From NCBI GenBank assembly GCA_973895155.1, contig OZ316898.1, positions 13,047,659 to 13,111,658 of the forward strand: a stretch of 64,000 nt of DNA. Reading direction: 5' to 3'. The first letter of the stretch is position 1. Each line of letters starts with the position of its first letter. The stretch comes from Marsupella aquatica (taxonomy: Eukaryota > Plantae > Marchantiophyta). Below, in pieces: positions 8,946 through 49,872 of the stretch. The notes below the pieces were generated by a model, which had not been told where the DNA came from, made no database searches, and was given only the letters and a program-made list of their open reading frames with translations. The position numbers and the translations under genes are program-made.

Positions 8946-9065
8946 GTGCAGATGGTGTTGAAGAGCCTGGGCATGTAAAAAGGACATAGTTATAAGAAGT
9001 GTCAGCAGATGATCAAGGGAGTCGATGCGGACTGTAATGGGAAGGTGGACTTTCAGGAATTCAAG
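8946..9065 (+). pseudogene. Calmodulin-like (CML) C-terminal EF-hand gene fragment
   Basis: Translates VQMVLKSLGM*KGHSYKKCQQMIKGVDADCNGKVDFQEFK, with canonical EF loop DADCNGKVDFQE and an in-frame TAA at 8976. No upstream EF-hands are recognisable. Confidence 0.75.
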
Positions 9066-28581: not shown

Positions 28582-28875
28582 CTCGGGAGTTTCATTTTCA
28601 CAAAAATGGCATATCACGTGCACGAAGGATAGGGTCATTTTATTGGTTCTAAGAGAAGACTTAAATTTTTTTGTAGAAGAACAATAGAATCTTTTAAATT
28701 CAATTTGAGACTTATAAGAACATTATGGTCTTTTTAATCCAATTTTTAGAATATTCCAAAAATATTCCAAATTTATAGGGGTTAAAAAATTTAAAAAAAT
28801 CTTGCATTTTAGGGGGTCCGAGGCCTAAAAATGTCGCAGGCGATGGGGAGGTCCCCATATAGTGAGACCCCCGAG
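28582..28875. mobile_element. 294-bp MITE (copy 1) of the P-like family
   Basis: TIRs CTCGGGAGTTTCATT / AGTGAGACCCCCGAG. Flanks CTAATGAC / CCAAGGAC (6/8 match, degenerate 8-bp TSD). Colinear with the copy at 34747-35042. Confidence 0.88.
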
Positions 28876-31800
28876 CCAAGGACAATGTCTCACTATGAGA
28901 CTGCAATTCTTTTGGTCAATAAACATACCAAATGTCAATATCTATACCCTAGACAAAAGCTCAACCTAATAACTAAAACTTGCAACTTACCCCAAATTTC
29001 TTCATCTCCTTGCCAAGGCTAGGCACCTTAACTCCCACACATGTTTTCTTACTTTCTTTTATCCCCAAATCCTAACTCAATTTCCCTTAATTCTATTTCA
29101 TCTTATCCATTTGATGAGGGCCATCTAAGAAAGTTATAATATCCATATTTTTCAAATTTGTTCATCATGTAGGTCCCCAAGCTAGTTAGCAACATCAAAA
29201 ATCTCAGCTCAAACTTGAGAGGACAAAATCATGGCAAGAAAACTTATTTGACGCGCATATCTTAGGATGTTGGCATACCCAAACCGGGACCCAAACTATA
29301 GCTGCATAGAAAGTGCATCATCAAACCCAAAGAGAAAAACTGACAAACTTAAGTACACACTCACTATGATCAGAGCTAATTATCAAATTATGACAACATG
29401 TATCTTTTCTTGTGACTATTCTGCAAATTATAACATATGATCTCATCCATCAATCTAAAATAATAATACATGACAACATGCAACTTTTCTTGTGACTACT
29501 GTGCATTGTTGTTCATCCTTCCCTTTCAATTGTTAGCTAATGATTGATCAAATGCGCCAATCAATCAGATCTAACAATGGAGTCAATCATCGTTGCTTTT
29601 TAAGTACATGCCCCATTAGGGAGTCTCAATCCCCTTGATGCCATAACCCAAGTTAAGGTTCACCCATATGGTACCTCACCGGGGGGTATAAGGTTTGACC
29701 CGACACTTAATGCAGTAGTTGGGGGAAATGGCCCCCTCCATTTCTGCAAATACTGTAAAATGCCGCGCTTCACATAGGAACGTCCATGATACCTTAACTG
29801 AGAGAAAATGTCGGCATTTGAATCATCTACTACTATAATAACGAATCCCCAGTTTTAGTCCTTCGTCCCGTTACAAAAATGAAAAAGGAGGGAACAAAGC
29901 TAAGCCATCAGATATTTTCTAGAATTATTTATGGCTCTTGGATTGAGTGAGATGGAAACCTAAAATTGGCTGTAAGTTATAGTACAAGGTAGATATAATA
30001 TGTCATAGAGTACTTGCATGTGTTACTGTAGTTATTTTGTAGCTTGCGTATAATACTGTTTGACATGGAGCATTAAAGTGTAAGTATATTATTTTATGGT
30101 CTATTAATTTAGAGTACATTTATATGTACATTTGGCATGGGGCATGAAAGTGAAAAGATTTACTTGAGATAATGGTTTTGGTAGGGAGCGAGCACTAAGG
30201 GGAAGAGAGTAGGTTGACATTATATTATTTTGACTTTTGCTCTTAAAAAGGAGATTTAACTCTTTGGTGTCATGGAATGAATGCAATGAATGTCTGTATA
30301 GTCAAGAATGTGTGTACATATAGTGGGGTCGGATGACCGGCTGGTCCGGTCGTCCGGTCAGAGGAGGTAGAGTCTAACACTTCCCTTTGGATATATAGTG
30401 ACAACTATATAGACAACATAGACTATACCTATTATATCATGTTCATAGGAAATACATGATATAAGTACAAGCGAGGTAGACTGCCTCGTTAAAAAACCTT
30501 TATCAACTCTAGCTTAGTAAAAACTCTACCAGTGTAGCAGAGAAAAAATATGAGTGCTAAAGGAAAAAGAGTGCAGCCTAACAGTCCTCGTCTTAATATA
30601 TAAATGTCAATGTTAAGTAAAGTTAGATGCTATAGTAAATCTAGCTTGAACATCTGTCTCAATAGTAGGTCGTCAACATCATGTCATCAGCATCATGTCG
30701 TCAGCATCATCAAGCATCATGTGGAGCAGCAGCCTCCACGGTCATCATGCATCGCACGCTCCGCAGTCCAATCGCCTGGCAGTGTCGGTGGTGAACTGAT
30801 GGCGATAGTGATTTGGTGAAGAGATCCGCACAATTGTCTACACTTGAAATCTGCAAAATGTTGATCTCTTTTCCATGTAACTCGTGGGTGTAGAAAGACT
30901 TCGGAGCTATATGCTTCACGAGATCGCCTTTGACGAATCCTTTCGTGATCTGCTGTATACATGTTGCGTTATCCTCAAAAATGTTAGTAGGCTTTGTTAG
31001 TGGTGGTAGGCCGCATTTGGTGTTGATGTGATTTATAAAGGATCGTAACCAAACGGCTTCACGACTAGCCTCATGTAGAGCTAAAATCTCTGAGTGATTC
31101 GATGAGGTTGCTGTTAGGGTCTGTTTCACACTTTTCCAAGAAAAAGCGGTACCCCCAATAGTGAAGACATATCCGATTTGGGATTTGGCGGTGTCAGTGT
31201 CGGAAAGATATCCGGCATCCGCATATCCTATGAGTTCGTGGTTTGCACCGAATGGGTAAAATAACCCAGTATCAGTGGTGCCACGCAGGTATCTAAATAT
31301 GTGCTTAACTCCGTTCCAATGTGTGGCTGTGGGAGTTGCATTGTGTCTAGCTAGTAAGTTAACTGCAAATGCAATGTCTGGTCGGGTCTGATTTGCTAAA
31401 TACATTAATGCCCCGGGGTCCTCACTTATTTCCTTCCAACCCATCACGCGCGAATAAGTATAGGGTTTTTTAATTCAATTTTGCGGAATACTTAAGAAGT
31501 TTTGTTGAAGAACTTTAGGGGTTGAGAAATACATATTGAAGCTTAGAAGTATAATAGGGGTGCTAAAAATCTCACTTCTTCAATCTAAGTTGTTAGTTTA
31601 AGATAGGGCATTTTAGGAGGGCCATATATGAGGGACACATGTCAATTTTTAATTGGTCCATGTGGCACTTCCTTATGTAAATAGGTTGTAGGGTTTAGGG
31701 GCAAAATGGGGGTTGGGTGGTGGGTTTGAGGGATAATTTTGAATTGTGTGGGCGGGAGATGGATCATGAGAGGGAGGGGACGGTAGGAAGTGTCGGTGCC

Positions 31801-34192
31801 TTTAGGGCCATGCATTACAATACAATGGCCGGGCCCTCAATTCCTCTCAAGAGCCGTTTGAATTGTTTGCCCAATTTGCGAGGCCATCGATCCATCCCCC
31901 GCATCCAATGGTGTAGGGTTGCTTGTCCGTTTAGGGCTAAGTGGGACTGTTGGAGAGGGACGATTGCGCTTTGTGAAGGGTAGCGATTGCACAGGGTGAG
32001 CCGCGGACCACGGGCTGGGTGCTGCCTCGATCTTTTTTGAAGGAAATGCAAAATTTGGGGTGTTGCGGCCGGGGTTGTGGCCATGATCAATGTGAGCTAA
32101 GGTGAGGGTCTGGGTATTGCTTCGAGTTTTTTTGAAGGAAATGCTTACACACAAGATGGGCATTGTGGCTCTATTGATCAAACTTAGGTGGAAGTTGTGA
32201 TTGTGATCAGCTGCGAGTGTGATCAGCTGCGAGTGGGATGAGCTGCGAGTTTGATCAGCTGAAGTCATTTTGGGAGTGAAAGTGATCCGGTGATAGTGGG
32301 CGATAGTGGGCGATCGGGCGATGCGGGTAATCTGTGTTGTCGTGATTACAGTGAAATTGATTGGGCGAGTACTGTGGGCACTGCAAGTGAGATCAAGCAA
32401 GTCTAAGGAGTTGCTTTGCATTATGGGCTGCGGGTGAGCTACTGGGTATTGCGGCTGCGATTGAGAGCTTGGGCAATGTGTTTGTGACAAATGCTGCTGA
32501 TTGAATGAGATCGGGGTGCGTTGTTGCTACATTTGAAGACCTTGTCAGGGCGCATGAGCTGCTACTGCGATTGAGTGAGGTGCTGTTGCGATTGAGTGAT
32601 TGAAGGTCGGGTGATCAGTCTGCTCTTGCTTTGCGATTGAGTCATGATTTGCTGCTGCTGCAACTGAGTGGAGGTTGGGGTGTGCTGCTACGCTGCGCTA
32701 CTGGCACATCCGCAGCAAATCAAGATTGAGTGGAGGTCAGGGTGTGCTGCATTGCTGGCTGCAATCAAGTTGGGTGAAGGTCGATTGAGTTTCTACAGAC
32801 AGTTGAGATTGAGATAAGCTGCGCTGTGTTGCTGGCTGCAAACGAGTTCATAGAAGGTGTGGTCGAGTGGTTTGTTGGCGCTGCACTGTCACTGGCTGCA
32901 ATTGAAGAAGCACAAGTGAGCTGCCTGATCAAGCTCAGCTCAGGTGACTGCATCTGGTGGAGTTCTTGCTCACTTCCCGGCTACTTTGATTTCATTCGCT
33001 TAGACTACACTCTAATCGATGCTTGGTTTATTTGCTAGATAGTGTTGTAATCTTTGTGTCGCTTTTGATCTCGGGTTCCCTTTGGTTGGTCTGGGAGAGT
33101 TCAAGCGAATATCAGCTGAAATGTGCTGTCATGTTTACCTTTCTGATGCGCAAAGTGACAGCCATCTCTGCCCTACGCAACCACTTTGCTTGCAGGGATT
33201 GAGCCCTACATACTGTCAACTTGCTCCTCAATCTTGTTTTGTTTACAAGCCAGCTATTTTGATTTGACTACTCTAGTGCAAGACAATGCAGTGTCCAGTG
33301 CTCTCAAATAATCCATAATATATTTACCTCCCCCTCTTTTGCAAGCAGATTTGTCTGCGGACCTGCTTGCAAGGATTGATTGATGGCTTAACACTCTAGA
33401 TATTGAAGTGAAAAGAAATAGTACTTTTTCCATTATTCAACCGAAGGAAGAATCTAATAAGAATTAGATTACTTGCTGAAAATCAGTCGAGAAACAAAAG
33501 CTTTAACTGACATTCAGTTGGCATTAATTCTGTTGTGTAGCTTGTTCAAGAAGAGGACAGTGTTGCTTGTCTCCCGACTTGTCTAGGATCTTTGTAAGTC
33601 TAGAACCTGGAACCAATTCTTGCAAAGGTATGTTAAGTTCTGGCTCTTGAGTTCACAATGTTATTTCTTGGTTTATGCTCAGTTCTCCATGACACTGTAA
33701 TTGTTTACTGTATGTAAAGCTCTTTTGTATTCCTTCTTCTTCTGTTCAGTTTGGTCTTAGTTATTGGATGTTGCATGGTATATATTCATTTACCTTTCTT
33801 AATTCCTTTATTTATGTATTAAGTCTTGTGTTTGCTCTCGACCAGGGGATGTATTTCCACCGGGAATGAACCTGGCCTTAGTTACACTCCTCGAATTCAG
33901 TGACCTACATTCTGATAAGTTAATATGTTTTGAACTCTTCGTGCAGGATGGATTGGTTTCCAGATTGGTTTAAGGTGTAGGGGAAGCATCTCATAAGCTT
34001 CAGCAATATATACGTTCAGACCCAAAATTTGTGGAGGGAGCAGACAATCAAGGTAACTATGCTTATATTCAGGATGCTCAATTTGTAGTTGCACCAATAA
34101 CTATGAATGTGTTGTTCAATGTTGAATGGATATCAAGCCAGGGTTGAAAATTGGATGCTGAGTAAATGGAGCATTTGTTGTGCAGAGGTAAA

Positions 34193-35150
34193 TTACCATC
34201 AGGCAAGCTGAGATGGCTTTGGATGTGCCACAGATTGACATATTTTCCCATAAGGAGCACCACCGCATGGATCCCCCTTGCTGTTTCTTTTGTGATGAGA
34301 CAGATGATTTTCGTATTTTGTGATGGTCCTTGTAGTAGATATTTTCACTTTGTTGGTGGAGAAGGTATACAGGGGGCCATTTGCACTCCTGTCACATTGC
34401 CTGAAAACAATGACTGGAGGGCACCCTGGGTTTGTCAATTGTGTGCTACCGGCAGAGCTAGATGCTTTGCTTGTGGACTCATTGGCAGATTTGAAAATCC
34501 CACAACAGAAGAATCTCTTGTGCTCCACTGTGCCCACCCTCATTGCTTTTCTCATTACCACCCTGGCTGCCTTAGGGTGCTACTTATGGTTGGGGCACTG
34601 CCTCAGAGGTCTCATCCAACAAGTCCTAAGAACCTAATGTGCCCAAGGCATTTTTGTGACTACTGTAAAGTCTACAAGGATGGGATTAAAGATTTTGTAC
34701 AGTGTCGTAGATGCCCTCATAGTTGGTGTCATGATGAGACCCCTGGCTCGGGGGTTTCACTTCCACAAAAATGACATATCACGTGCGACGAAGGATAGGG
34801 TCATTTTATTGGTTGTAAGGGAAGACTTAAGAATTTTTGTAGAAGAACAATAGGGTCTTTTAAATTCAATTGTGAGACTTATAAGAACATTAGGGCCTTT
34901 TTAATTCAATTTTTGGAATATTCCAAGAATATTCCAACTTTATAGGGGTTAAAAAATAATATTTTTTCTTACATTTTAGGGGGTCCAAGGCCTAAAAACG
35001 TCGCAGGTGATGGGGAGGTCCCCATGTAGTGAGACCCCCGAGACCCCTGGGGGGGTGAATTGGTTCCTGTGCAGCCTCATACCTCTTAGAGGCTATCAGA
35101 ATATTGTTAGAATTGCTTTGGTAAAGGCCTTATATAGCTGAGTAATCACA
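34193..35150 (+). pseudogene. EDM2/NSD-like tandem PHD zinc-finger gene inside the transposon, with a frameshift and a MITE insertion
   Basis: CCFFCDETDDF/(shift)/FCDGPCSRYFH...WVCQLCATGRARCFACG...CAHPHCFSHYHPGCL...MCPRHFCDYC...QCRRCPHSW follows the Cys/His spacing of the EDM2/NSD triple PHD cassette. The frame continues (GGVNWFLCS) after the MITE. Upstream exons at ~33540-34050 are possible but unresolved. Confidence 0.75.
34747..35042. mobile_element. 296-bp MITE (copy 2) of the P-like family
   Basis: TIRs CTCGGGGGTTTCACT / AGTGAGACCCCCGAG (14/15 match). Perfect 8-bp TSD ACCCCTGG (34739-34746, 35043-35050). Confidence 0.95.
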
Positions 35151-38100
35151 TGTGAACAATGATAATTTTGTTTTTGTTGGTGTCCTAATTTGGACATCAA
35201 AAGCTTATTTGAACTATTTTGGAGTAATTATCTCTAATACTCTTCTATTGTTTTGTTCTTTGTGCTATATGGCAGGTTCAGTCTATATGGGAGGTTCTTT
35301 ATCCCTGGGCCCCCAGCCTTTGTAAACTAAAGAGGTATACGTGCGTACACCCCCCTCCTTAGTACCCCTTATTATTTTTGGAAGCCTATAAAAATTTCTC
35401 TTGTTATTCTTAAAAACTTAATTTTGGAGAATAAATCTGCCCCTTTGAGATATTATAATTTCACATTTTACACCATTTATGAAAGCCTTGAAAAGTTATA
35501 AATTCATCATTTGCACACAGTTCTAAAACTGACGGGAGTGTTTTGGAAGGGTTTTGGGTACATACATTTTTGTGTTCGTGACCCTTTAACCCCAAACTTC
35601 AACTTTGGGGCATTTTTGAACCACACGACAGGGTAGTCAGGGTTCAAAAGCTCCAAAGTCCTAAACTACTTTGAATCATAGATGTTGCAAGCATAATTAT
35701 ATGTCATATACACATGTTCCAATAAAGGGTGGTCACAAGGACCAATCCTATTGTGACGCGTGTCACATCCATATTACATCACCTCTTGAAGCATATTAAC
35801 TTGGGCAACATTTATATAAGCCTATATTAGTTAGAAAGGGTTCTTTGAATAAAACCATCCCTTGATATTTCTAAGCCAATTATAAAAATTAATCTCAAAT
35901 CAGATTTTTTGCACCCTTCATCCGTTCGCACGTCCAACCCATTATTAATAATGCTGGGGGCCCAGGGTTCTTTATGTGACTGTGATTGTATTTAGAACCC
36001 TTGATTACTCTCTAACTTGAACAAATTGATTGAAATGGCTACCCAGTTTGTAAAATTACTTCACAAAAAGAGGGATGTGGTGACTGATGGGAAAGATGAA
36101 GAACCTATAGCTGTGTTGGCCTTCAAAGAAGGACAAACTTTAGCTGATTTTCGAAATCGAATTCCTGATTTGGTTGATTTTGATTTTGATTTCTGGGATT
36201 ATAGGCTTCCTGGTCGTATGAAGGTCAAGAGTGAGAAAATGACTGAGCTGTCTGAATTGGATGGAAAAGTTGTTGTCATTGAACAAATTGGATCCTTGCC
36301 TAGTGCTAGGACAGATTTTCCATCAGTTTCTGCTGCTGTCATCCAATCGGTTGCAGTGGACTCTTCCCAAGGTGAACAACTTCAAGATGCTCCCCCTGTG
36401 AGAGCTTCTTTTGAGTCTATTCTCATGTCTAAAGCAGCTGTCAAAGTCTGGAATGATGAATTTATAAGACTAGAGAAGTGAATTCACAAAAATGGGTATA
36501 AAAATCATAATTGGAGAATTCGAACATGGGATGAAGGACAAGATGTGAGAGGCCATCTAGAGTGTCTTGAGTGTAGAGTGATCTATGGGAGGGCAGACAA
36601 TTCCCAAGATAAGAAGTCAATTGCTAACCTATTCAGCAATTTTAAGACCAAGCACCTTGCCTTTGCTAAACACAAAGACAATTACTGCAGGAGAAGGGGC
36701 ATTGCTATGACTGGGGTCAAGCCCTCTGATCTTGCACAGAAGCCTGAGTTTGATTATGAGGGGGCCATAGCAACTGGCCTAGAGATAGTCCAGACTCTGA
36801 ATACTGAGTGTGGAGGTGATGATGAGCTATTTCATGTGCCCCCTATGCCTGGTGTAGCCAATAATGCAAACAAGTGGTTCCTTTATAAGGTTCGTTGTAA
36901 AGTCTGTGGGGCAATCATGGATTTGGTTTGTAAGAAAGGGACTTTGGACCACAACCTAAGGACACATTTGGTCAGTCGGGGTCACTTGGATGTAGTTGAA
37001 GCCAGAGAGAATACAGCTGAACTTGCATTGAGATCTGGAAAGAGGGGCAGACCAAGGAAGCCAGATGAGAGGGATCAACATCCTTCACAGAATTCAATTT
37101 TAAAATTCTTCAAGGAGGATGCTTCCAATGCAAGCAGCAGCTCTGGTACAGGTGGGTCTATAGACATTGATGTGGGCTTGAGTTTGCTTTGTTGGGGAAG
37201 ATGGGATGAATATGTAGAGTGGAAGAATGTGAAGTATGCTGTGAAGGGTATCTTGCATGATCAGTGTGGTGGACATGTATGGGATTTAGATGCTACAGTC
37301 TCTGTTGATGTCTACAATCCTAACACAAGTTCTATTGTACATATAAAAGGACTATTTAGGCATAGAGATTGCTCTAGGTTGTCCTTGTATGGTGGGGGGT
37401 TTTTGAACCTAACTTGCAGTAGATGTCATGTTATAACATTAGAAGATGACTTTCGTGGGCGGGTGCACAGGGAAGCAGAAGCTTTAGCAAAGAGAGGGGA
37501 AAGAAGCACAGAGGGTGGTTTGAATGCACGTTATTTGACACGTCCAGAGTTGACCAAACAGATGCATGGTCTGAATGTCAAGAGAAGAAAGGAGAGATGG
37601 TTGTTGGCACTACAGACTCAGAAAGTGTGTGCCCTTAGTACTAGGAAGAGAAAATTGTAGGAACTATTAGGAGTAGCTGCAGACAGAAAAGATTTGAGAC
37701 TTTTTCTAAGGAGTATTGTCAATGGTCATAGGAATGGTGCATTTGGTGGAAAAGAAGGTCTATGGGATTTCTTGAAGGATGTAGGTAAAACTTTGGAGAG
37801 AAATGCAAGGGGGTTTCGTTACAGTCAGAAAACAAAAGCCATAGCTCAGGCTATGTTTCAATATGGGGGCCGGCAGGTGGCCCATGTTTTTGCAAGGAAC
37901 TTAGCTGGGCCAAGCTTGAAGACACTAAAACGAGATAGAGCAAAATTTGTTCAATTTCGTGCTGGAATTAGGCCAGAAACATTCAAGGAGATGGCTCGGA
38001 TTTTGTCTGCTGCAAAGGAGATGTTGCAAATTCAGGGGGATGTTCCTGTCATGCTTGCAGAGGATGAAACCAGGATCAAGGAAAGCCCAAGGTATGTTTA

Positions 38101-40486
38101 TTACAACACATATTGATGCAATTGGAGTTGAAGACTATTTGTTAGACATGTAGTTTTATCAACTCTTTGGAACTTATCTCATTGACATTGGGCTCTCTGC
38201 AGGTGGGAGGCCAAATATGACACTCTGATTGGTTTTTGTGGTCATAAGGATGAGCACACTTGTGAATTTGGATTAGAAATTCTTGTAGGTGACGGTGAGG
38301 ATGGCTATAACAAGATTGTAAATACATTTGAGGATTTTAATAAGGGGATGTATGCTAGAGTTGTCATTGTGAATCCATTGCATGTTGGAATGCCAAAGTT
38401 GGTCCTCTGTGCTATATCAACCTGTAACAAATTCAAGGCAGAATGGGTACGAGAGCATTGGGTGCAATTGAAGGAATCTTGGGATGTGCATTGCAGAGAC
38501 TCTGTAGGTCCTTTGCTTGGGCATGCTAGTGATGGTGATGCAAGACGCAGGAAATTGATGTTAGAAGATTACAGAGGAGAAAATGGTTCTTACCCTAGAT
38601 TTTCTGTAGGGTGGGAAGGATGGCCTTACTCAGTTGCCATATTGCCTAATGGGGACCTCTATGGTTTTGGTGATCAAGACCAGCCTCACAATGGGAAAAA
38701 GTTGATAAACCCACTAGATCGAGTGTCCTCAATAATGGCACTTGGAGACCAACATGCTTCTCTGTTTCACGTTTGTACTGTGTACAATAGTTATCCAATT
38801 CATCAACATGGATTGAATTGGGATGATGTGAACAGATCTGACCGTTAGAATTGGGCTGGTCCCCAGAGGATAGCATCAGAAAAGGTGCGTGCATGTTTAG
38901 CAGATTTGCATCTAAGAACCGATCTGTTGTATGAACGAAGTTTGGGGACAGAGTTGTATTTGCAGATCTGTGCAGATTACATTGACATTTTCTACTCCCA
39001 GAGACATGATCTAAGGACTAGAGTGAAGCTGGCAGGAAAAGTTTCTTGGTTCTTTCGATTGTGGAGGTTGTGGTTAAGGTATGGTGATCATGCTGTAGGT
39101 GGAAATGTTGCTTCACATACAGAGAAAAATATGATTTCAATCCAAGCTTTTCATGATGTTAATATGTCTTGCCAGTTCATTGTGTTGCTTGTATGTGTAT
39201 TTCGTGACAAGTTTTCTCACTTGTGTATTCCATTTCATGAGTTGGGTTCTGATTGTTGTGAGATCTTTTTCAGCAAGGTAGGTGGAATGAGTGGCCATGA
39301 GAGAAATTATGATTTTGGTTCTTTGTTGGACAGTGCTGTTGGGTTGAATCGTCTTGCTGGATTAGAATGTGGACCAGAGGGCTTGAAAGTAGCTTGATCA
39401 CATAAAAAGTAAGATCATGTGTGGGCCAAGCTTCATCCTTTACTTGAAGGTGAAGATGCACCTAATCTTTTTGATTACTCTGAAGTGCAAACTAATGAGT
39501 TGGTGGTTGCAGCCTTGAAAGAAGGATTTGAAGAAGCAAAAGAGTTGCTTAGAATGTTGCAAATGTCTCCCCGAAGTGATCTGCCAGCATCAAGAAAGCG
39601 GTGGTGGACTCACCCTTGGCATGTGGAAGTTGAAACATGGCCAGATTCAGCTATCATAGTAGAAGCAATTGTTGTTGACGATTCTGAAGACCATGTAGAG
39701 CACAGATCTCCAATTGGACCTCGACTAGAAGGAGAGTTTCATGAATTTAAAGACCCTGAGGACGATCTAAATCAAATTGATGCATGGTTGATAGATGATG
39801 TAACCATTCCTGATGATGTTTTGCAGGATGGGGCCGAGTTAGACATACCAGAATCTCATTCTGTAGAGGTAGATACTTTGGGGCATGAGGTTCGTCATGT
39901 GTTGTCTTCTGTTGTGGCTGACCTTACAGAGTCTACTCAGAGCCCTCTACAGGAAAAGAGGAAGGTTTTGCCTACAGTTACCTATGAGGGCAGAACAATT
40001 TACAAATCTACTTTGGTGAGTCAACTAGTGGGCAACCCTCATTTGTCTAAGGATAGGCTCACAAGGGTGAAGCAAGTGGCATACTATAATCTTGGTAAGA
40101 GGAAACAATGTGATCCAAATATTGTGACCTGTTTTGTTGATGTTGGAAGTGATTGTGGAGTAGCATTTGAAAGTGCTAATGTTGCAGGCCCTTCTACAAG
40201 ATCAAAGAAAGGGAAAGGTAAAGGAAGAGGTAAAGCTAGGACTCAGGAACCAGAAGTGCAAGCCAAGAAAGAATTTTGGCTTGGTCGTATTATGATGATG
40301 AGACAGAAAGTTAAGGGACAATGGACTAGAGTGAGATCTGCTATTGATTTGCTTGACAGGCCAACACCTCCTCATGGACACATAGGGAGTATTTGTCAGT
40401 TCTTATTTAATTGGTATAAGCCAATAAGCTCAAGCAAGGTTGAATTTGTTGGGTATTTACTCTTACGTCTAGGTTAGGTATGACGT

Positions 40487-40665
40487 GGTTGGTACAACAA
40501 TGTGGGTTGGTACAACAATCTGGTTAGGTACAACAATGTGGTTAGGTACAACTACGTGATTAGGTACAATAATGTGGTTAGGTACAACTACGTGATTAGG
40601 TACAACTACGTGATTAGGTACAACAATGTGGTTAGGTACAACTACGTGATTAGGTACAACAATGT
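40487..40665. repeat. 18-bp tandem array within the 5' LTR (10 units; 7 units in the 3' LTR at ~46154-46278)
   Basis: Units G(G/A)TTAGGTACAAC(A/T)A(T/C)GT, counted directly. Confidence 0.92.
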
Positions 40666-41688
40666 GGTTAGGTTAACTAAGTTGCACACTATATCATAAG
40701 AGGCACGTGTGCTTGGAGATGTAGAACCAAGGCTCATTGTTATGGAGCCACTTGAGAGATAGGGAGAGCTTACACTGTGGAGACTCGGTACAGCCGACGG
40801 GCTTAGAGTTCAGTAAAGCTCTCTTGTGTGTTCCCGTGGACGTAGCCTCAAGGAGATGAACCACGTATCTCTTGTGTCGACTACTTGCATGTTGGATATG
40901 TCATGTGCTTACCATTGCGATTATCGTCTATACTCAATAATTGGTATCAGAGCATGCCTGGGAGGTGACGTGTGTTCGTGACGGGATTTCGTGACGGTTT
41001 TTTCCAGCGTTGAGTGTCGGTGGATTTCCCGGAGTTCTGTCGCATGGAACTTGGAGTTTATGGGCTCAACGGATAGATCAGGGCAAGGGCTTTCTAATAG
41101 TGTGAAGAAATCGTTGAACGAAGCTTGTGGTGCGAAGAGATCTAAGTTTTTATCGTTCTAGATTTTGTGAAGAAAGTCGGCAACATTCGTGTTCGACGGT
41201 TTTTTGGAGGTTGTTTTTTCGACGGTGTGAGCTCTACGGCGAAGGAAGCGTCGCATGTTATAGCTCCATTTGTAGATCGGGACGAGCTGATCATTTCGGT
41301 AGCTGGTTTGTTGCCGAGTGTATAACGAGTATGTCACAACGAGCAAAAGAAGCGTTCTGATTTTTTGACCGGCTATGGAGTCTTCTTTTGCCTGAGCGGG
41401 GTTTCTTGGTGTTGCAATCGACTCGGAGGGAGAAGCGTCAAGTGTTTTGACTCAACAGAGAGATTGAGGCAAGACAATTGTTTTGAGTCCGGGATTGGCT
41501 CTTGATGCGAAGAGGAAGGCTAAGAAAAATCATTTACCTTGTTGGACTTGGTGACGGCATCGAGTGTAATTCATCAACATTCGTTGTTGACAAGCATTGG
41601 AAAACTAGGCTCGTGGGCTACGTGGCAGTGATAACCTTTGAGTTTTTTGAGAGGTTAAGAAAAACATCATTTTTTCTTGATTTCTCAC

Positions 41689-44600
41689 ATGAGTGACTTG
41701 GAGGAGGGTTCTATTGAGTCACCGGAGAGAACAGAGGAGGAAGCAGAAGATCTAGCGAAATTGTGGTCACCGGTATTGCGGCGAATGACAAGAAAAAGGA
41801 TGGGGACAATCAAGCTTGGAGGTCCCAAGTTTGAGGTTACAAAATACGATGGCCGCACGGACTACTTGTTGTGGGAGCGACAAGTGAAGGGGGTACTCCG
41901 TGCGACCGGGCTTGGGAAATTGCTGAAGGACCAGCCAAATGATGTCGACAATGATGATTGGCAGGACATGCAGGAGCAGGCTGTGAGCACCATGATGCAC
42001 TATCTTCAGCCTAATGTCATCAAGCAATTGGCAGACCATGTCAATTGTGCATCATTGTTTTCCGCGTTGGAGCAAAAGTACCATCAAAAGGAGCTATCGA
42101 ATCGGCTCTACACATCTTTGAAGCTTATGAGCTTCAAGATGAAGGAGGGAAGTGCAAAGATTCAGGACCATATCGATGGTTTCAACGACCTGGTCGTTGA
42201 TTTGCAAAATCTGGGGGAGGATTTGAGTGATGAGCGGCAGGCTTTTCACTTGCTTAGCTCTTTACCCTTGTCGTATCAGTCATTGTCATGAGTGCTGCTT
42301 CATCGTGACAGGAAGACTATCACTTACAATGAAGTTGTAAGTGCTCTGTTGACTGATGACTTGCAGCAGAAATTGACCATGCCCTCTCAGCCATCATCAT
42401 CGTCTGGTGCTGCCTTGAATGTGAATCGTGGGAGGTCACAGAAGCATCCAGAGCACCACACGAATGGCAGGGGAAGAAGTAAATCTAGGACAAGATTTGC
42501 TTCAAGGGGGAAGTCCCAAGAGAGGAAGCCGATGGTATGCTGGAAGTGTGGCAAGACTGGCCACATTAAGAAGGATTGTAAGGGTAAGGCAGCTGAATCT
42601 TCATCAGCCAATGTGGCTAGTGTTGATGGAGAAGTTGATTTACTCAACGATGAGTATGTTTTATGAAGTCAGGAGTATGCCCTGTGCACATCATCTAGGA
42701 GAGCAAATGATGTGTGGATTCTTGATTGTGCTTGCTCCTTTCACATTTGTTACATTCGCGAGTATTTCAATTCTTATTCTATGTCAAACGGTTCAGTTTT
42801 GATGGGAAATGATCACTCCTGTCAAGTTGAGGGTATTGGGTCTGTAAAGATTCAAATGTTTGATGGCATTGTGCGCACAGTGTCCGGAGTCAGGTTTGTA
42901 CCTGGCATGCGTAAGAATTTGATTTCACTTGGTGTGTTGGATACAAATGGTCATCAATGGCGAGTAATTGATGGTGAACTTCAAGTCATGTCGGTAGAGA
43001 TAGTGATTTTGAAGGGGCGCAGATAAAAGAATTTGTATGTGTTGCAGGGCAATACAGTATGTGGAGAGGCCAATGTGACCAAGTCTCACGAGGAAATGAC
43101 TCAACTATGGCATTCACGGCTAGGCCACATGAGTGAGAAGGGTTTGGCTATCTTGCAGAAGAATGGGCTCATTTCTAATTTGCAGTCTTGTAAATTGGAT
43201 TTATGTGAGCATTGCATTTTTGGAAAGCAACATCGTCGTGCTTTCGGTATCGGAACTCATCATTCCAAAGCGGTTCTTGAGTACATACATAGTGACGTGT
43301 GGGGACCATCCTCGACTCCCTCACATTCTAGAAAATTGTACTATGTATCCTTTATTGATGATTACTCAAGATTTGTATGGATTTATTTCATGACGCATAA
43401 GTCTGATGTCTTGTCCATTTTTACAAAGTGGAAGGCCCAAGTAGAGAATCAGATAGGAAACACGGTTAAGTATTTGGATACAAGGGTGAAGAGTCTAAGG
43501 TCAGACAACGGCGGGGAGTTATCCCCTACAGAACAGGGGATAACTCGTCATCTCACCACAGTTTATACTCCACAGCAGAATGGTATAGCTGAGAGGCTCA
43601 ATCAAACATGTATTGGAGCGGTCACGGAGTATGCTGAGCCAATCAGGTTTACCACAGGAATTTTGGGCAAAAGCTGTCAATACTGCAGCTTATTTGGTAA
43701 ATCTTTCTCCTTCTAGTGCAATCAATTTCAAAACGCCGTTTGAAATGCGTTATAAGCGGCAAGTAGACTATCATGGCTTGGTAGTTTTTGGAAGTGATGC
43801 ATATGCTCTCACACCAAAGCAGAATAGGACCAAGTTGGATCCTACATCCAAGAAATGTATTTTTCTTGGGTATCAGAGTGGTGTGAAGGCCTACAGGTTA
43901 TGGGATCTTATTGCCTGTAAGCTCGTTGTTAGTAGGGATGTTTCTTTCAATGAATCCAGATTATTGAAGGAGGGGGAGAATACTCAGGTTTCCCGTACTG
44001 ACAAAGGAAAATCTCCTATCCCGAATCTCGTTGAGGGGGAGATTGATCATGAAGTGCATGATCGAAGAGAAGGAGGTGCTCCAAGCATGGAGCTGGTTCC
44101 TGTGCCAGAGGAACAAAAGGAGTTTATTGATGCTGGTGAGCAGCAAATGGATGCTGCTGAGCTTCAAATTGTACCAGTAGACGTAATTCAACTGGAGTCA
44201 TCGGCTAGAAGAACATCTGGTCGTACTGTACGCGCTCCTCCTAGGTATGGACAGTGGGTTGATTCATCTCAACTGCAAGAGGATGATTTTGCAGCTGATG
44301 ATGAGGGTGATGCGTTAATTTTGGAAGAATGGGAACCTTCTTCATTTCATGAGGCAAGTGCTTCAAAGGAGAAGCAGAAGTGGACTGCATCAATGCAAAC
44401 GGAGATGCAGTCACTAAAGGACAACAAAACTTGGGAGCTTGTTAAGCTGCCTAAGGGTCGATCAACAAGTGGTGGACAGCAAGTGGATTTACAAGGTGAA
44501 GGATAATTCCACGAGAGATGGATCGAAGGTCTACAAGGCTAGGTTGGTAGCAAAGGGATTCACACAAGAGAAAGGTGTGGATTATAATGAGGTCTTCTCA

Positions 44601-45923
44601 CCAGTTGCTAAATACTCTACAATACGGCTATTGTGTGTACTTATTGTAATATTTGGTCTGCTGCTAGATCAGATGGATGTTGTCACAGCTTTCCTCTATG
44701 GCACCTTGGAAGAGGTGATCTTCATGAGACAACCGCTAGGTTTTGTGAAGAGAGGACAGGAGGAATTGGTTTGCAGATTGCTGAAATCCTTGTATGGGTT
44801 GAAGCAGTCACCAAGACAGTGGAATAAGCGGTTTGACGATTGGATTCGGTCACAAGGTTTTCACAGAAGTGTATTTGACCCTTGTGTGTATTTGAAACCG
44901 GTGAAGAATGTTGTCTTTGGGTTCATTGTATTAGTACTTTATGTGGATGACATGCTTATTGCGGCCAAGGATAGGTCTGAGATTGTTAAGCTTAATGCAC
45001 TGCTCAGTGCAGAGTTTAAGATGAAGGACCTGGGGCCAGCTAAGAGGATTTTGGGTATGGAGATCACTAGGGACTTGGAGGCTGGTAAGCTATGGTTGAC
45101 ACAGAGCAGTTATGCGAGGAAGGTAATTGTTAGGTTCAACATGGGAGATAGCAAGCCAGTAAGTACCCCTTTGGCTGCACACTTCAAATTGTCATCAGCT
45201 TTCTATCCCACAGATGCGACAGAGAAGGGGCTGATGTCAAAGGTTCCTTATGATAAGGCAGTGGGAAGTCTCATGTATTTGATGACTTGCACTAGACCTG
45301 ATCTTGCCATGGCTATGGGCAAGGTGAGTAGGTACATGTCAAATCCAGGGAAGGTACATTGGGAAGCAATGAAGTGGATTATCAGGTACTTGAAGGGTAC
45401 GGTGGATCATGGTCTTTTATTTGATGCGAATGCAAAGAATGCTAGATCATTGATTGGCTATGTAGATTCTGACTATGGACAAGATTTGGACCGAAGAAGA
45501 TCAACAACAGGATACGTGTTCACACTTGGCGGTGGATGCATAAGTTGGAGGCCTACTTTGCAGAAGTGTATTGCTCAGTCTACTACAGAAGTGGAGTATG
45601 TTGCAACTGCGGAAGCAGCAAAGGAAGCGATTTGGTTGGATAGACTTATCACTGAAATGGGATTGCCATAGGGGAATGTGAAGCTCCATTGTGATAGTCA
45701 AAGTGCGCTCCACCTTGCTGTGAACCAGGTGATGGATAGCAGAGTGAAGCACATTGACGTCAGATACCATTTTATCAGGCAGGCTGTGTCTGATAATTTG
45801 TTTGAGCTAGTCAAGATTGATGATAAACTCAACCCGGCTGACGCATTTACCAAAGTGATTCCTTTGGAGAGTTTCTCTAGACACCGTGACGTATTGCAGG
45901 TTTTGCAATTGCATCACAAGTAG
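41689..45923 (+). pseudogene. Copia gag-pol polyprotein (gag, CCHC knuckle, protease, GAG-pre-integrase, integrase, RT, RNase H) with stops and frameshifts
   Basis: CWKCGKTGHIKKDC; WILDCACSFH; LWHSRLGHMSEKG; HSDVWGP, RSDNGGE, PQQNGIAER; YKARLVAKGFTQ; LYGLKQSPRQW; YVDDMLI; GYVDSDYG; KHIDVRYHFIR. Confidence 0.95.
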
Positions 45924-48900
45924 AGTTTTCTTAACATTCATTGTAATTACTGATATATGCTCTTCCTCATTCCTATGTATTAGGCTACGGCTTAGTTCTG
46001 GTTTGCTCTAGTTAGAGAGGGAAACCGGTTTGGTTTTTGTCCAAAACTTCCCGCTGAGGGATCATATACATTTGCAGTATTACTCTCCCCTAGACCAGAG
46101 TCAAGGGGAAGATTGTTGGGTATTTACTCTTACGTCTAGGTTAGGTATGACGTGGTTGGTACAACAACGTGGGTTGGTACAACAACCTGGTTAGGTACAA
46201 CAATGTGGTTAGGTACAACTACGTGATTAGGACAACAATGTGGTTAGGTACAACTACGTGATTAGGTACAACAATGTGGTTAGGTTAACTAAGTTGCACA
46301 CTATATCATAAGAGGCACGTGTGCTTGGAGATGTAGAACCAAGGCTCATTGTTATGGAGCCACTTGAGAGATAGGGAGAGCTTACACTGTGGAGACCCGG
46401 TACAGCCAACGGGCTTAGAGTTCATTAAAGCTCTCTTGTGTGTTCCCATGGACGTAGCCTCAAGGAGGTGAACCACGTATCTCTTGTGTCGACTACTTGC
46501 ATGTTGGATATGTCATGTGCTTACCGTTGCGATTATCGTCTATACTCAACAGAATTCACTTATGATATGACTGATTTACAATGGATTGATATAGAAATGG
46601 TGATGACTAATGTTACTCTAAGCATGAAACAAGGGATTGGCTTAGTGTATGTGTTAGATCGAGTTGACAAACAAGCTTTGGATACTTATCTAGAGACCAT
46701 GTCTAGAGTTGAATGATGTGCATGCACCAAAACTCATGGTAGTGGTTTAAGTAGGTACAAGGATAGGCTAGGGGAATATGCTAGGGGGTGGCAGATTTGG
46801 ATATTTGGGCTTCTTGCTCAATCAGGGGTTCAATTCCCCTCTGCCACATACACTCATTCAGATTTTTTACTCAATTTTCTTTTGGTGCACCTACCGTTCA
46901 CATGAGACAAGCATAGGAGATTGCAAATATGAACAACTCATACTGTATATTGCTTAAGCTTCTACTAGAATTGAGATTCTAAGTAGTGGAAGTATCTGCA
47001 CTATATACTATAAGTTTTTTATGATAAGATATGGATGTCAAAGGAGCATAGTAGGGCTTGAATGAGCTTCACAAAGACTCAAATAATCTTGACAAACACT
47101 CAAAAAAGGTGCGCATTTGAAAGAACTTTTCTTTTCTTAGTAAGGTATGTTTTAATGATGGCAAAACTTTACTTAACCTTTTTTAGGGGTCAAAATTTAA
47201 GGATTTGGAATTCTTCTAAAGTATGATAGGGAGGGGAAATTTATTTTTTTACTTAATAAGCTAGGGTCGCAGGGGACCAAAATGTCGAGCATGGTATGAG
47301 GGCCTCTGTATACTGAGGCCCCCGAGATTAATGCTCCTATTGCGGAAAGGTATGGGGTTTCTGGTCCTAATAGTGGTTCATGTTCTTTGCGCTTGCGAAA
47401 AACATCAGTATTGTTTTCTAATGAACGTACAACCATTGGTGACGTCAATGGGTGTGCTAGGTTCATATTGAACTCTTTTAGGATCTTTTCGGTTTGTTGG
47501 ATTGTGCAGTAATGAAGTTTTGCAGTTTGTGCAGTTATAGGTGATGATTTACTCATGCCCTGGTTAAGTGCACATGCGGCTTTGTATAGTTGAGTTTTCT
47601 TTGTTACGGTGTGCAGTTATGAATGTTTTGCGGTTATGTGCGCTTATTTGGTTAAGTGCAAAATTTCCTTTGTAATCAAGATTTCTTTGACAGATTGTGC
47701 GCTTAGGGATTTTGCACTTAAATGTGCGTTTATGGTTAAGTGCAACTTTTCCTTTGTATCTGAAATCTCTTTGACGGATATTGCAATTAAAGAGGGTTTT
47801 GCACTTAGCAGCGGTTTCTCGATGTTTTTTGATTGATGTTGCGAAATTTTGATTTCAACGACCTCCTTCCAAGCTCCTCTACGGTCTTTGCTATAGCTCC
47901 AGCCTTCCGTGACTGTTATTGCTTCGATTCTTTCATTTTTGTCCTCCTCTTCTAATTGTTTTGTTTTTTTCTCAGGTTCCAATCCTGTGTGTTATGTCCT
48001 TATGGGGATTGAGGTGGTGGCTGCCTCTCTCTCACCCTTTCGAATCTCAGTGCCTCCGCTTCAACTTCGAGCTCTCTTCCTCTATTTGTTGTCGTTGTTC
48101 GATCAGGTTTCCAGGGGTTTGCGCTTGTCCTTCAGATTCCAATCGGCCTCTGCAACGATTTGTGCTCTCTTTCTGTTTGTGGCTTTGATCAGTTTCTGCT
48201 TCTAAAGTTTTCTCTTTTACTTTGTTAATCTGCCTCCTTGCTGCCCCGGTCGTTAACTGCTTATGATCGATATGCTGCAGTTTCGATTCGATGAATGGGT
48301 CCCGTTGCCTCTTTTTCTTCTCAAAATAATTTTCTTGCAGAATCGGTCCTCACAGTGCCTCTCGTCCATTCTTTCTCTTCAGAAGGTGATTTCGATTGGA
48401 CTCTTTTCAATTCTCAGTTGTCCATGCTGTTCTGATCAATTTTCTTCTCAGCATGCTTCTCCTTATTGTGTTCTTGATCCGCATCGATCTTTTCGCTTCT
48501 CGGTGTCCTTATGAATCAGTGCGTTTCTGCTTCTTCCGCCTTTTTAATTTTCATATGCTTCTGGCTGGGTCTCTTTAATTTCTTCTTACTCGATTGTGAC
48601 TCAATTCGCCATAGGTTTTCTTCTCGATTCTCCTTTTGCTCCGCTCGGTGAGCTTTCGTGCTGATAACGTGTCATGGAATGAATGCAATGAATGTCTGTA
48701 TAGTCAAGAATGTGTGTACATATAGTGGGGTCGGATGACCGGCTGGTCCGGTCATCCGGTCAGAGGAGGTAGAGTCTAACATTTGGAAGTTAGTTAATTT
48801 TTAGTTATCTTGCATGGACCCCAATTTCTATTTTGCACAATGATATCTTTCACTCAAATTTTTTTTGTGTAATAATGTATTTTAACAATTATTATTTTTA

Positions 48901-49179: not shown

Positions 49180-49872
49180 TCTTTCACAGAAGGATAGCTT
49201 GGGTGAAACAACACCATTTTTCTTTTTAACATCTTTTACTTGACGATATCTTTGGCAAAATGACACCTTTTTCTTAATAACATCTTTCACACAATGGCAT
49301 GTTTGGCAAAACTACTTTTTTTAAGACATCTTTTTACTTTGTGACATCTTTCACTTAACAACATCTTGGGCAACACAACATCTTATTTCTTAACAACATC
49401 TTTTGTCCAACGCACGGATATTTTCCGTGAACGATGTCTTGGCCGACACAACGTTTTTTCTCAACATCTTCGCCAACATGACAATTTTTTCTCAACGACA
49501 TCTTGGCCGACACAACGTCTTTTTTCTCAACGACTTCTTGGCCGACATGACATTTTTTTGCTCAATGATCTCTTGGCCAACACGACATCTTTTTTTCTCA
49601 ACGTCTTCTTGGCCAACACAACTTCTTTTCTCTCAATGACGTCTTGGCCGACATGACATCTTTACTCTCAACGACCTCTTGGGCGACACGACATCATTTC
49701 TCTCAACGACCTCTTGGGTAACACAACATCTTTTCTCTCCACAACCTCTTGGGCAACATGACATCTTTTCTCCCCACGACCTCCTAGGCAACACTACATC
49801 TTTTTTCTCCACGACCTCTTGGCTGACACTACATCATTTTTTCTCAATGACATCTTGGCCGACACGACTTCT
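49180..49872. repeat. Degenerate ~35-bp minisatellite inside the Helitron 3' arm
   Basis: Repeated TCTTGG(C/G)C(G/A)ACAC(A/G)ACATCTTTT..TCTCAACGAC units. Confidence 0.85.

What the first reader, a model, noticed from the sequence alone, without database searches (positions are those of the whole stretch)
34193..35150. Transposon-borne EDM2/NSD-like triple PHD finger: a candidate anti-silencing or targeting factor
Seen: a Cys/His-rich reading frame between the TIRs, upstream of and co-oriented with the transposase. It matches the CxxC..CDGPCxRxFH..CxxC..CFxC..CxxxxC..YHPxC..CPxHxCxxC..CRRCP pattern. Known: Arabidopsis EDM2 uses such PHD fingers to read H3K9me2-containing marks and promote full-length transcripts across intronic heterochromatin, and plant TE-encoded anti-silencers exist (VANC of VANDAL). 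Inference: the element keeps a histone reader either to be expressed from heterochromatin or to steer integration into it, which fits its position inside other TEs. It could also be neutral captured host DNA.
Basis: partly seen in the sequence, partly recalled or inferred. Interest (0 to 1): 0.8.

Follow-up and report, generated by a model that had tools for sequence, protein, structure and literature searches.

The report
Dead transposon-borne PHD histone-reader gene
A large cut-and-paste transposon of liverworts carries, just ahead of its transposase, its own small gene made only of an EDM2/NSD-type triple zinc-finger "histone reader"; the gene has been kept by selection in one branch of the transposon family, but the copy in this window is a broken relic.

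Summary
Window 34213-35141 (+) is the remnant of a stand-alone, intronless triple-PHD gene (Pfam PHD_NSD, E 4e-8). It lies inside a 15.9-kb DNA transposon (31412-47326, 8-bp target duplication), upstream of and co-oriented with a roughly 1,500-aa transposase that looks P-element-like.

This copy is dead. It has a +1 frameshift in finger 1, a cognate 296-bp MITE in finger 3 and a lost 3' end. The transposase has at least four nonsense codons and a nested Copia element.

The gene is not junk. Intact 226- and 247-aa relatives exist. A Calypogeia fissa element has the same PHD-then-transposase order. dN/dS is about 0.1, like the transposase. Twenty-three Cys/His columns are shared with host proteins. 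A model of the intact relative matches the NSD2 PHDvC5HCH fold (Z 6.8).

It is no recent EDM2 fragment: identity to any host protein is about 30%. Its nearest kin are a liverwort family (Mp1g03210-like), but AU tests do not fix the donor. Three Riccia elements and a second Calypogeia lineage lack the gene, so it marks one subfamily.

Histone binding, anti-silencing and targeting remain untested. This scan has already reported EDM2-type PHD genes on other transposons of this genome, mostly CACTA. New here are the P-like carrier and the subfamily pattern.

The parts
31404..31426 (+). Left 8-bp target-site duplication (31404-11, ATTAATGC) and left terminal inverted repeat (31412-26)
34186..34193 (+). 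AGGTAAAT, a perfect splice-donor-like motif 27 nt before the PHD start codon. It is invariant in three diverged copies and occurs only once in the element.
34213..34308 (+). PHD gene remnant, 5' part: start codon and first CxxC of finger 1. It is out of frame with the rest (+1 base in a T run at about 34303-34318).
34319..34746 (+). PHD gene remnant, main part: rest of finger 1, finger 2 and the first half of finger 3. All Zn-ligand columns are kept. The last 8 bp (34739-46) are the left copy of the MITE's target duplication.
34747..35042 (+). 296-bp cognate MITE with the same 15-nt terminal repeat as the large element, inserted in finger 3. The duplication ACCCCTGG lies at 34739-46 and 35043-50. 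A sibling MITE lies at 28582-28875.
35043..35141 (+). Degraded 3' tail of the PHD gene up to an in-frame TGA. It no longer aligns with intact relatives, and the last Cys-x2-His pair is lost. The first 8 bp are the right copy of the MITE's target duplication.
36017..40446 (+). Transposase gene in one frame. It has a conserved 111-nt intron (38092-38202) and nonsense codons at 37658, 38846, 39395 and 39410. It is P-element-like by language-model leads only and has no Pfam hit.
40447..46549 (+). Nested Copia LTR retrotransposon (5-bp duplication GAATT) that interrupts the transposase 3' end
46550..46720 (+). Last about 55 codons of the transposase, resumed after the Copia insertion
47312..47334 (-). 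Right terminal inverted repeat (47312-26) and right target-site duplication (47327-34, ATTAATGC)

Best explanation
Window 34213-35141 is a decayed copy of a small, intronless, stand-alone accessory gene. Intact relatives encode 226-247 aa. The gene belongs to one subfamily of a large P-element-like DNA transposon of liverworts, and it encodes nothing but an EDM2/NSD-type triple PHD zinc-finger module.

Shown:
- The gene lies inside the element, ahead of and co-oriented with the transposase.
- The same arrangement is kept in Calypogeia fissa.
- The transposon-borne PHD sequences form one clade.
- They have diverged about as much as the transposase has, under purifying selection.
- They keep the zinc ligands, and an intact relative folds like known histone H3-tail readers.

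Inferred:
- The module was taken long ago from a liverwort host gene of the EDM2-type PHD superfamily, probably the Mp1g03210-like family.
- The protein binds histone H3 tails and serves the transposon. Because it has no effector domain, two roles are most plausible. It could be an adaptor that couples the transposase or the element's chromatin to a particular histone state, as the RAG2-like PHD does. Or it could be a competitor of host readers of the same mark, which would be anti-silencing.
- A conserved splice-donor-like motif just before its start codon suggests that one transcript yields either the PHD protein (unspliced) or the transposase (spliced).

This copy has been dead for some time.
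For: - Pfam PHD_NSD hit, E 4e-8.
- Intact relatives P0001 (247 aa) and P0030 (226 aa; ORF 210-890 of L005 with its own start and stop).
- Calypogeia locus L001 has the PHD at 8332-9012, then the transposase at 9301-14132 and an exact 15-nt terminal repeat at 16396-16410. Between window and L001 only the PHD, the transposase and the repeat ends align.
- dN 0.31 with saturated dS of about 3, omega about 0.1, and codon-position identity 0.72/0.76/0.47. The transposase gives omega 0.08-0.20.
- The transposon PHD clade has 100/100 support.
- The two PHD-bearing elements, together with a third copy (L008) whose PHD state is unknown, fall in one transposase clade at 99/99.
- 23 Cys/His columns are shared with host proteins.
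- The AlphaFold model of P0030 has pLDDT 78. Its best matches are the NSD2 PHDvC5HCH domain (Z 6.8, rmsd 2.3 A, 77 of 81 residues) and the rice Ehd3 tandem PHD bound to H3K4me1 (Z 5.8). Only 4 of 48,161 chains reached Z of 2 or more.
- A family profile hits NSD2 residues 649-806 at E 2e-18.
- The motif AGGTAAAT is invariant before the start codon in three copies.
Against: - No binding, expression or splicing data exist.
- This copy and the Calypogeia copy are both broken. The two intact ORFs sit on contigs too short, or without DNA on hand, to show a transposase beside them.
- dS is saturated, so omega is only a rough bound.
- Four related elements lack the gene, including a complete 12.8-kb Riccia fluitans element. 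The transposon can therefore live without it.
- In the transposon clade the sixth ligand of finger 3 is replaced, so that finger may not be canonical.
- Placement of the transposon clade is unstable. The 136-row quick tree put it with long algal branches. AU tests reject neither an EDM2-orthologue origin (p 0.20) nor exclusion from the liverwort family (p 0.23).
Confidence: 0.7

Rival explanations
1. The PHD frame is not a separate protein but an upstream exon. Splicing would join it to the transposase and give that enzyme an N-terminal chromatin-reading domain, much as Rehavkus transposases hold a PHD finger.
For: The two frames are co-oriented and only 0.2-0.9 kb apart. The transposase has at least one intron. 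Splice-like motifs are conserved near the PHD start. A PHD finger inside a transposase is known in Rehavkus (PMC6446971).
Against: P0001, P0030 and L001 all end in a stop codon 12-20 codons after the last zinc pair. No conserved donor was seen at the 3' end of the PHD frame. The conserved donor-like motif lies before the start codon, which fits skipping of the PHD frame better than joining to it.
Confidence: 0.13
2. Neutral transduplicated host fragment: a piece of a host PHD gene picked up by the element and carried along without function.
For: The window copy and the Calypogeia copy are both broken. The gene is missing from most relatives. The window's whole element is decayed.
Against: Identity to any host protein is only about 30%, yet the frame stays open in two lineages. 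Omega is about 0.1 and third codon positions are near random. 23 ligand columns are kept. The non-coding flanks are unalignable while the PHD still aligns.
Confidence: 0.05
3. An element-encoded brake: the PHD-only protein limits transposition, for example by occupying chromatin sites, like the truncated repressor proteins of the Drosophila P element. Selection would keep it because it reduces damage to the host.
For: The protein has no effector domain. P elements are known to encode repressor isoforms (my own knowledge, not tested here). The RAG2 PHD and acidic hinge have inhibitory roles according to the abstract of PMC12337333.
Against: No evidence bears on it either way. The subfamily that carries the gene is not visibly less successful: its MITEs are present and its terminal repeats are identical across genera.
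Confidence: 0.1
4. A host gene that lies next to the transposase by chance.
For: None beyond its similarity to host PHD proteins.
Against: It lies inside the terminal repeats and target duplication. The same order is found in another genus. It is intronless, whereas the host gene Mp4g03050 has its PHD region split by an intron.
Confidence: 0.02

Closest known systems
Arabidopsis EDM2 (ENHANCED DOWNY MILDEW 2) PHD-finger module
   Same: Both have the same three-finger architecture (Pfam PHD-1st_NSD, PHD_NSD, PHDvar_NSD) and share Cys/His columns. The profile hit to the EDM2 cluster has E 1e-11. EDM2's PHD fingers are reported to bind H3K9 methylation (PMC5364540).
   Different: EDM2 is about 1,300 aa with large flanking regions, while this protein is the module alone at 226-247 aa. 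Identity is about 25-30%. The best tree places it outside the EDM2 orthologue clade, though this is not statistically secure. Ligand 6 of finger 3 is replaced.
Liverwort Mp1g03210-like family (Marchantia, Riccia, Calypogeia; C-terminal triple PHD) and Mp4g03050
   Same: These are the best-scoring non-transposon relatives, at E 1e-27 to 1e-20. They group with the transposon clade at 100/99 in the careful tree.
   Different: They are 619-768 aa host-like genes present once per assembly, and Mp4g03050 has introns in the PHD region. Identity to the transposon clade is only about 30%. The AU test does not require the transposon clade to sit inside this family.
NSD1/2/3 PHD clusters (PHD1-3 and PHDvC5HCH)
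   Same: Profile match to NSD2 residues 649-806, E 2e-18. Fingers 2 and 3 superpose on NSD2 PHDvC5HCH at Z 6.8, and Foldseek ranks the NSD3 PHD5-C5HCH/H3K9me3 complex at the top.
   Different: There is no SET, PWWP or other catalytic part. NSDs are animal enzymes, not transposon genes.
RAG2-like accessory gene of RAG-like (Transib-derived) transposons
   Same: A DNA transposon carries, beside its DDE transposase, a second gene whose product includes a PHD finger that reads methylated H3 tails. The sea-urchin RAG2L PHD binds H3K4me2 (PMC7204232).
   Different: RAG2L is a kelch propeller plus a single PHD finger and is convergently oriented. Here there is a triple PHD only, co-oriented, in a P-like element of plants. 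The two are not homologous as genes.
VANC anti-silencing proteins of Arabidopsis VANDAL (Mutator-like) transposons
   Same: Both are transposon-encoded accessory proteins. The VANC proteins counteract epigenetic silencing of their own family (PMC5735166 and PMC10398659).
   Different: The VANC proteins bind DNA motifs in a sequence-specific way and are not PHD proteins. No sequence relation was tested or is expected.
Drosophila P element / human THAP9 transposase superfamily (the carrier element)
   Same: 8-bp target duplications in three independent insertions. Language-model neighbours are colinear: TNP-like RNaseH_N/GBD for the first part, and GBD/RNaseH_C/THAP9_C for the second.
   Different: No Pfam hit, no THAP domain and no profile hit to solved P transposase sequences. 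The structure model was too poor to use.

Membership tests
EDM2/NSD-type triple PHD module | Central finger matches Pfam PF22908 (PHD_NSD) above the gathering score | tested here: met
   Window ORF scores 33.8 bits against a cut-off of 23.9, E 4.2e-8. P0001 scores 32.7 bits and P0030 26.2 bits.
EDM2/NSD-type triple PHD module | First finger (PF23011) and variant third finger (PF23004) are recognisable | tested here: inconclusive
   Both matches are found in the right order but below the cut-offs: PF23011 at 17.9-20.4 bits against 27, and PF23004 at 13-14 bits against 27.
EDM2/NSD-type triple PHD module | Full set of zinc-binding Cys/His positions | tested here: met
   Met for the transposon clade as a whole: 23 shared Cys/His columns, with one finger-3 ligand replaced in all four members. 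Not met by this window copy, where finger 1 is frameshifted and the last Cys-x2-His is lost.
EDM2/NSD-type triple PHD module | Tandem PHD fold of histone H3-tail readers | tested here: met
   The P0030 model has pLDDT 78 and pTM 0.76. It matches NSD2 PHDvC5HCH at Z 6.8, rmsd 2.3 A, 77/81 residues, and the Ehd3 tandem PHD-H3K4me1 complex at Z 5.8. Foldseek puts NSD1/2/3 on top at E about 5e-3.
EDM2/NSD-type triple PHD module | Binding of modified histone H3 tails | not testable with these tools
   This needs peptide arrays or ITC with a recombinant intact relative.
EDM2 orthologue (the host anti-silencing factor itself) | Long protein (about 1,200-1,600 aa) with the PHD module at about residues 220-430 plus N- and C-terminal regions | tested here: not met
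   Intact relatives are 226-247 aa and consist of the module only. The orthologues Mp2g00350 and At EDM2 are 1,297-1,628 aa.
EDM2 orthologue (the host anti-silencing factor itself) | Falls inside the EDM2 clade in a tree of the module | tested here: inconclusive
   The careful tree puts it with the Mp1g03210-like family at 100/99. A tree forcing it together with the liverwort EDM2 orthologues is not rejected (AU p 0.20).
P element / THAP9 transposase superfamily (carrier element) | 8-bp target-site duplication and short terminal inverted repeats | tested here: met
   ATTAATGC for the window element, ACCCCTGG for the MITE and GTGGTAAT for Riccia L007, all with about 15-nt repeats. hAT elements share this feature, so it is not exclusive to P elements.
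P element / THAP9 transposase superfamily (carrier element) | Transposase matches the TNP-like RNaseH_N, GBD and RNaseH_C families | tested here: inconclusive
   No Pfam hit at E up to 5 and no PDB profile hit. Atlas neighbours carry these families colinearly, scoring 0.92-0.94 and 0.97. The AlphaFold model has pLDDT 40 and was not used.
P element / THAP9 transposase superfamily (carrier element) | N-terminal THAP DNA-binding domain | tested here: not met
   No THAP hit in any N-terminal piece. C2H2-like motifs are visible instead.
RAG2-like transposon accessory proteins | Six-bladed kelch propeller followed by a PHD finger | tested here: not met
   Only PHD families are found in P0001 and P0030. 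The resemblance is an analogy of role, not membership.

The most novel reading that the evidence does not exclude
A stand-alone histone-reader module has become portable transposon equipment in liverworts. It would be carried by unrelated superfamilies: the P-like element here, and CACTA elements according to earlier unchecked notes of this scan. It would act as a generic decoy or adaptor that competes with the host's own EDM2/Mp1g03210-type readers for heterochromatic H3 marks.
Probability: 0.2. Interest if true: 0.85.

Novelty: new variant of a known kind. Interest (0 to 1): 0.55.

Why it matters
Transposons are known to carry chromatin-directed helpers: chromodomains in chromoviral integrases (from my own knowledge), the PHD finger of RAG2-like proteins, and the VANC proteins of VANDAL elements. 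My literature searches found no plant DNA transposon described with its own EDM2-type histone reader.

If the protein binds a heterochromatin mark, it offers a compact natural system in a tractable plant lineage (Marchantia and relatives). Such a system could show how a mobile element reads, or interferes with the reading of, the marks used to silence it. It could also show how host reader modules are recruited by transposons.

The contrast between subfamilies with and without the gene is a ready-made natural experiment. For this window itself the biological weight is small, because the copy is a fossil.

Tried and rejected
- Pfam on all transposase pieces and on relatives gave nothing.
- A profile of the transposase core against all PDB sequences gave nothing at E up to 10. 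Single pieces gave only chance hits.
- The AlphaFold model of the 524-aa Riccia transposase piece had pLDDT 40.6, so I did not use it for fold search.
- DNA for the contigs of P0001, P0002 and P0028 could not be fetched. The neighbours of the intact 247-aa gene therefore remain unseen.
- I searched three Riccia loci and a second Calypogeia locus for a PHD module by HMM (three of the four) and by tblastn (all four). None was found.
- I looked for conserved sequence between the left end and the PHD gene (31412-34190). None was found in the window or in L001.
- I looked for signs that the element sits inside another transposon. Only one 116-bp repeat flanks it.
- The 136-row quick tree placed the transposon clade with long algal branches. 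I give more weight to the 36-row careful tree. The AU tests show that the donor is not fixed.
- An alignment of the stretch before the transposase start showed no convincing shared acceptor.
- A sequence look-up in the scan's notes was blank.
Exons and stop-free pieces were handled one by one, by reference. In the two trees built in scripts, the broken genes were concatenated with X at each break.

Full report
**1. What is in the sequence**

The window is plant-like DNA. Its closest protein relatives come from the liverworts Calypogeia fissa, Riccia fluitans and R. sorocarpa.

The ORF list shows a 202-aa frame at 34166-34774. It scores Pfam PF22908 (PHD_NSD) at E 4.2e-8, above the gathering score, and also shows a weak PHDvar_NSD match. 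Three-frame translation and DNA alignment with relatives give the true anatomy:
- The start codon is at 34213.
- The first CxxC of finger 1 lies in one frame (34213-34308).
- One extra base in a T run then shifts the frame.
- The rest of finger 1, finger 2 and half of finger 3 follow in another frame (34319-34738).
- A 296-bp MITE (34747-35042, 8-bp duplication ACCCCTGG) is inserted in finger 3.
- The tail up to the TGA at 35139-35141 no longer aligns with intact relatives and has lost the last Cys-x2-His pair.

**2. The element around it**

Terminal inverted repeats of about 15 nt at 31412 and 47326 are flanked by a perfect 8-bp duplication, ATTAATGC.

Downstream of the PHD gene, one long frame (36017-40474) encodes the transposase. 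Three of its apparent stops fall in a 111-nt intron (38092-38202, GTATGT...CAG). Its exon junction restores the motif seen in relatives. The stops at 37658, 38846, 39395 and 39410 replace Glu, Gln/His, Arg and Gln of the Calypogeia copy, so they are real nonsense mutations.

A Copia LTR retrotransposon (40447-46549, duplication GAATT; gag_pre-integrase, rve and RVT_2 domains) cuts off the last about 55 codons, which resume at 46550. The whole element is a fossil.

**3. Which kind of transposase**

Pfam finds nothing in any piece or in relatives. A 20-sequence profile finds nothing among PDB sequences. The structure model was too poor to use.

Two non-overlapping parts give colinear language-model neighbours. 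The part with the second catalytic Asp lands among clusters carrying TNP-like RNaseH_N and GBD (score 0.92-0.94). The following 310 residues land among TNP-like GBD, RNaseH_C and THAP9_C clusters (0.97).

Together with 8-bp duplications in three independent insertions, this makes a very divergent P-superfamily transposase without a THAP head the best reading. I put it at about 80%.

**4. Is the PHD gene part of the transposon family?**

The word search found only two relatives: P0001 (247 aa, intact, 53% identical) and a broken one. The exhaustive profile search found 212 proteins at E of 0.001 or better, but only two below 1e-30. These are P0030 (226 aa, intact) and P0031, a 128-aa sequence 98% identical to the first half of P0001. 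P0030 is a complete ORF with its own start and stop on a 1,162-bp metagenome contig.

The transposase N-terminus led to a Calypogeia fissa protein and its locus L001. There the PHD gene (8332-9012, two frameshifts) sits directly before the transposase (9301-14132), with an exact copy of the 15-nt terminal repeat at 16396-16410. Between the window and L001 only the PHD gene, the transposase and the repeat ends are alignable.

Four other relatives have no PHD module: Riccia fluitans L003 and L007, R. sorocarpa L004 and Calypogeia L006. All four were searched by tblastn, and L003, L004 and L006 also by HMM. L007 is a complete 12.8-kb element with both repeats and the duplication GTGGTAAT. Its transposase starts only about 0.9 kb from the left end.

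On a transposase tree the PHD-bearing copies form one clade (99/99), so a single gain or loss suffices.

**5. Selection**

- Window against L005: dN 0.31, dS about 2.8-3.3 (saturated), omega about 0.1. Identity by codon position is 0.72, 0.76 and 0.47.
- Transposase pieces of window against L001: omega 0.08-0.20, with the same position pattern.
- 23 Cys/His columns are shared between the four transposon sequences and eleven host proteins. All four transposon sequences share one replaced ligand in finger 3, a derived character of the clade.

Neutral decay over this much divergence would not leave two open frames and all the ligands.

**6. Fold**

An AlphaFold model of P0030 built with a 36-row alignment reached pLDDT 77.9 and pTM 0.76. 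Foldseek ranks the NSD3, NSD1 and NSD2 PHD5-C5HCH tandems first, including the NSD3-H3K9me3 complex (E about 5e-3, probability about 1).

The search that does not lean on Foldseek found only four chains with Z of 2 or more among 48,161. The top two are NSD2 PHDvC5HCH (Z 6.8, rmsd 2.3 A, 77 of 81 residues, 35% identity) and the rice Ehd3 tandem PHD bound to H3K4me1 (Z 5.8). A profile of the family hits NSD2 residues 649-806 at E 2e-18. That profile is dominated by host sequences.

**7. Where the module came from**

The best non-transposon hits are liverwort proteins of 619-768 aa with the module at their C-terminus: Marchantia Mp1g03210, M. paleacea, R. sorocarpa and Calypogeia. The 280-aa Mp4g03050 also belongs here. 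Their E-values run from 1e-27 to 1e-20. The liverwort EDM2 orthologues score 5e-20 and 1e-16, and the Arabidopsis EDM2 cluster scores 1e-11.

A careful 36-row tree joins the transposon clade (100/100, very long stem) to the liverwort family at 100/99. The earlier 136-row quick tree put it with long algal branches. AU tests reject neither a union with the liverwort EDM2 orthologues (p 0.20) nor a liverwort family that excludes the transposon clade (p 0.23).

So the module is of the EDM2 type, the capture is old (about 30% identity), and the donor is probably but not securely the Mp1g03210-like family. The host gene Mp4g03050 has an intron inside the module, whereas the transposon gene has none.

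**8. How it probably works**

Shown: it is a selected, module-only protein with a histone-tail-reader fold, encoded beside a transposase.

Inferred from what is known of EDM2 (its PHD fingers are reported to bind H3K9 methylation, PMC5364540), of NSD tandems and of RAG2-like proteins (their PHD reads methylated H3K4, PMC7204232): the protein binds H3 tails.

Without an effector domain it can only bridge or compete. I rate three roles about equally:
- Coupling the transposase or the element to a chromatin state, either as targeting or as allosteric control in the manner of RAG2.
- Competing with host readers, which would be anti-silencing.
- Self-limitation of transposition, a smaller possibility.

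In all three copies with DNA, the motif AGGTAAAT lies 27-40 nt before the PHD start, in otherwise unalignable sequence. It occurs nowhere else in the two copies held as whole elements or in the short L005 contig. In the Riccia elements the same motif falls where the transposase intron is expected. This suggests a leader exon whose splicing skips the PHD frame. The idea is untested.

**9. Novelty and standing**

Transposon-borne PHD fingers are known in RAG2-like genes (PMC7204232) and in Rehavkus transposases (PMC6446971). The VANC proteins are known transposon anti-silencers (PMC5735166). I found no paper describing an EDM2-type reader gene in a plant transposon.

This scan has already reported such genes many times in this same genome, mostly next to CACTA transposases, and once in "two unrelated DNA transposons". 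I could not test those claims here.

This report adds five things:
- the P-like carrier;
- the cross-genus synteny;
- the pattern of subfamilies with and without the gene;
- the fold check;
- the caveat that the donor is not fixed.

The copy in this window is of little biological weight by itself.

Noticed in passing
window 34186-34193; L005 182-189; L001 8292-8299: AGGTAAAT (splice-donor consensus) is invariant 27-40 nt before the PHD start codon in three diverged copies and occurs once per element. In PHD-less Riccia elements the only copy of the motif (L007 10405, L003 10202) falls between the two transposase exons, where the intron donor is expected. It may be a leader-exon donor that lets splicing skip the PHD frame.
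   Followed up: partly
window 34747-35042 and 28582-28875: Two copies of a roughly 296-bp MITE share the large element's 15-nt terminal repeat and its subterminal sequence. One has landed inside its own autonomous element's PHD gene with an 8-bp duplication.
   Followed up: partly
L007 7589-20394 (Riccia fluitans, GCA_043381455.1 CM092413.1): A complete 12.8-kb relative of the element with identical 15-nt terminal repeats and a perfect 8-bp duplication (GTGGTAAT), but no PHD gene. What fills the roughly 7.7 kb after its transposase was not examined.
   Followed up: no
window 38092-38202: A 111-nt in-frame intron (GTATGT...CAG) lies just after the first catalytic Asp motif of the transposase. 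Its position is conserved in the Riccia and Calypogeia copies. In L001 a tandem repeat has expanded inside it (L001 about 11457-11795).
   Followed up: partly
window 40447-46549: A Copia LTR retrotransposon (gag_pre-integrase, rve, RVT_2; LTRs 94-98% alike; 5-bp duplication GAATT) is nested in the transposase 3' end. An 18-nt tandem repeat lies inside its 5' LTR.
   Followed up: partly
window 30001-48000: Strong positive GC skew on the + strand (+0.17 to +0.27 per 2-kb bin) runs across the whole element, including the nested Copia, and reverses at about 48 kb. No explanation was tested.
   Followed up: no
window 18797-19447 (+), 25651-26847 (+), 63328-63948 (-): Host-like ORFs: a GNAT acetyltransferase (E 5e-20), a weak Kelch-repeat ORF and a GRF zinc-ribbon ORF. 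The element is therefore not in a gene-free region.
   Followed up: no
window 49450-49871 and 11043-11741: Tandem arrays with periods of 35 nt and about 61-65 nt.
   Followed up: no
Logan runs SRR18067302, SRR18067412, SRR18067441: The closest relatives of both the PHD gene and the transposase come from neighbouring sequencing runs of one project. If these are RNA libraries, the intact 247-aa PHD gene is expressed. The run type could not be checked.
   Followed up: no
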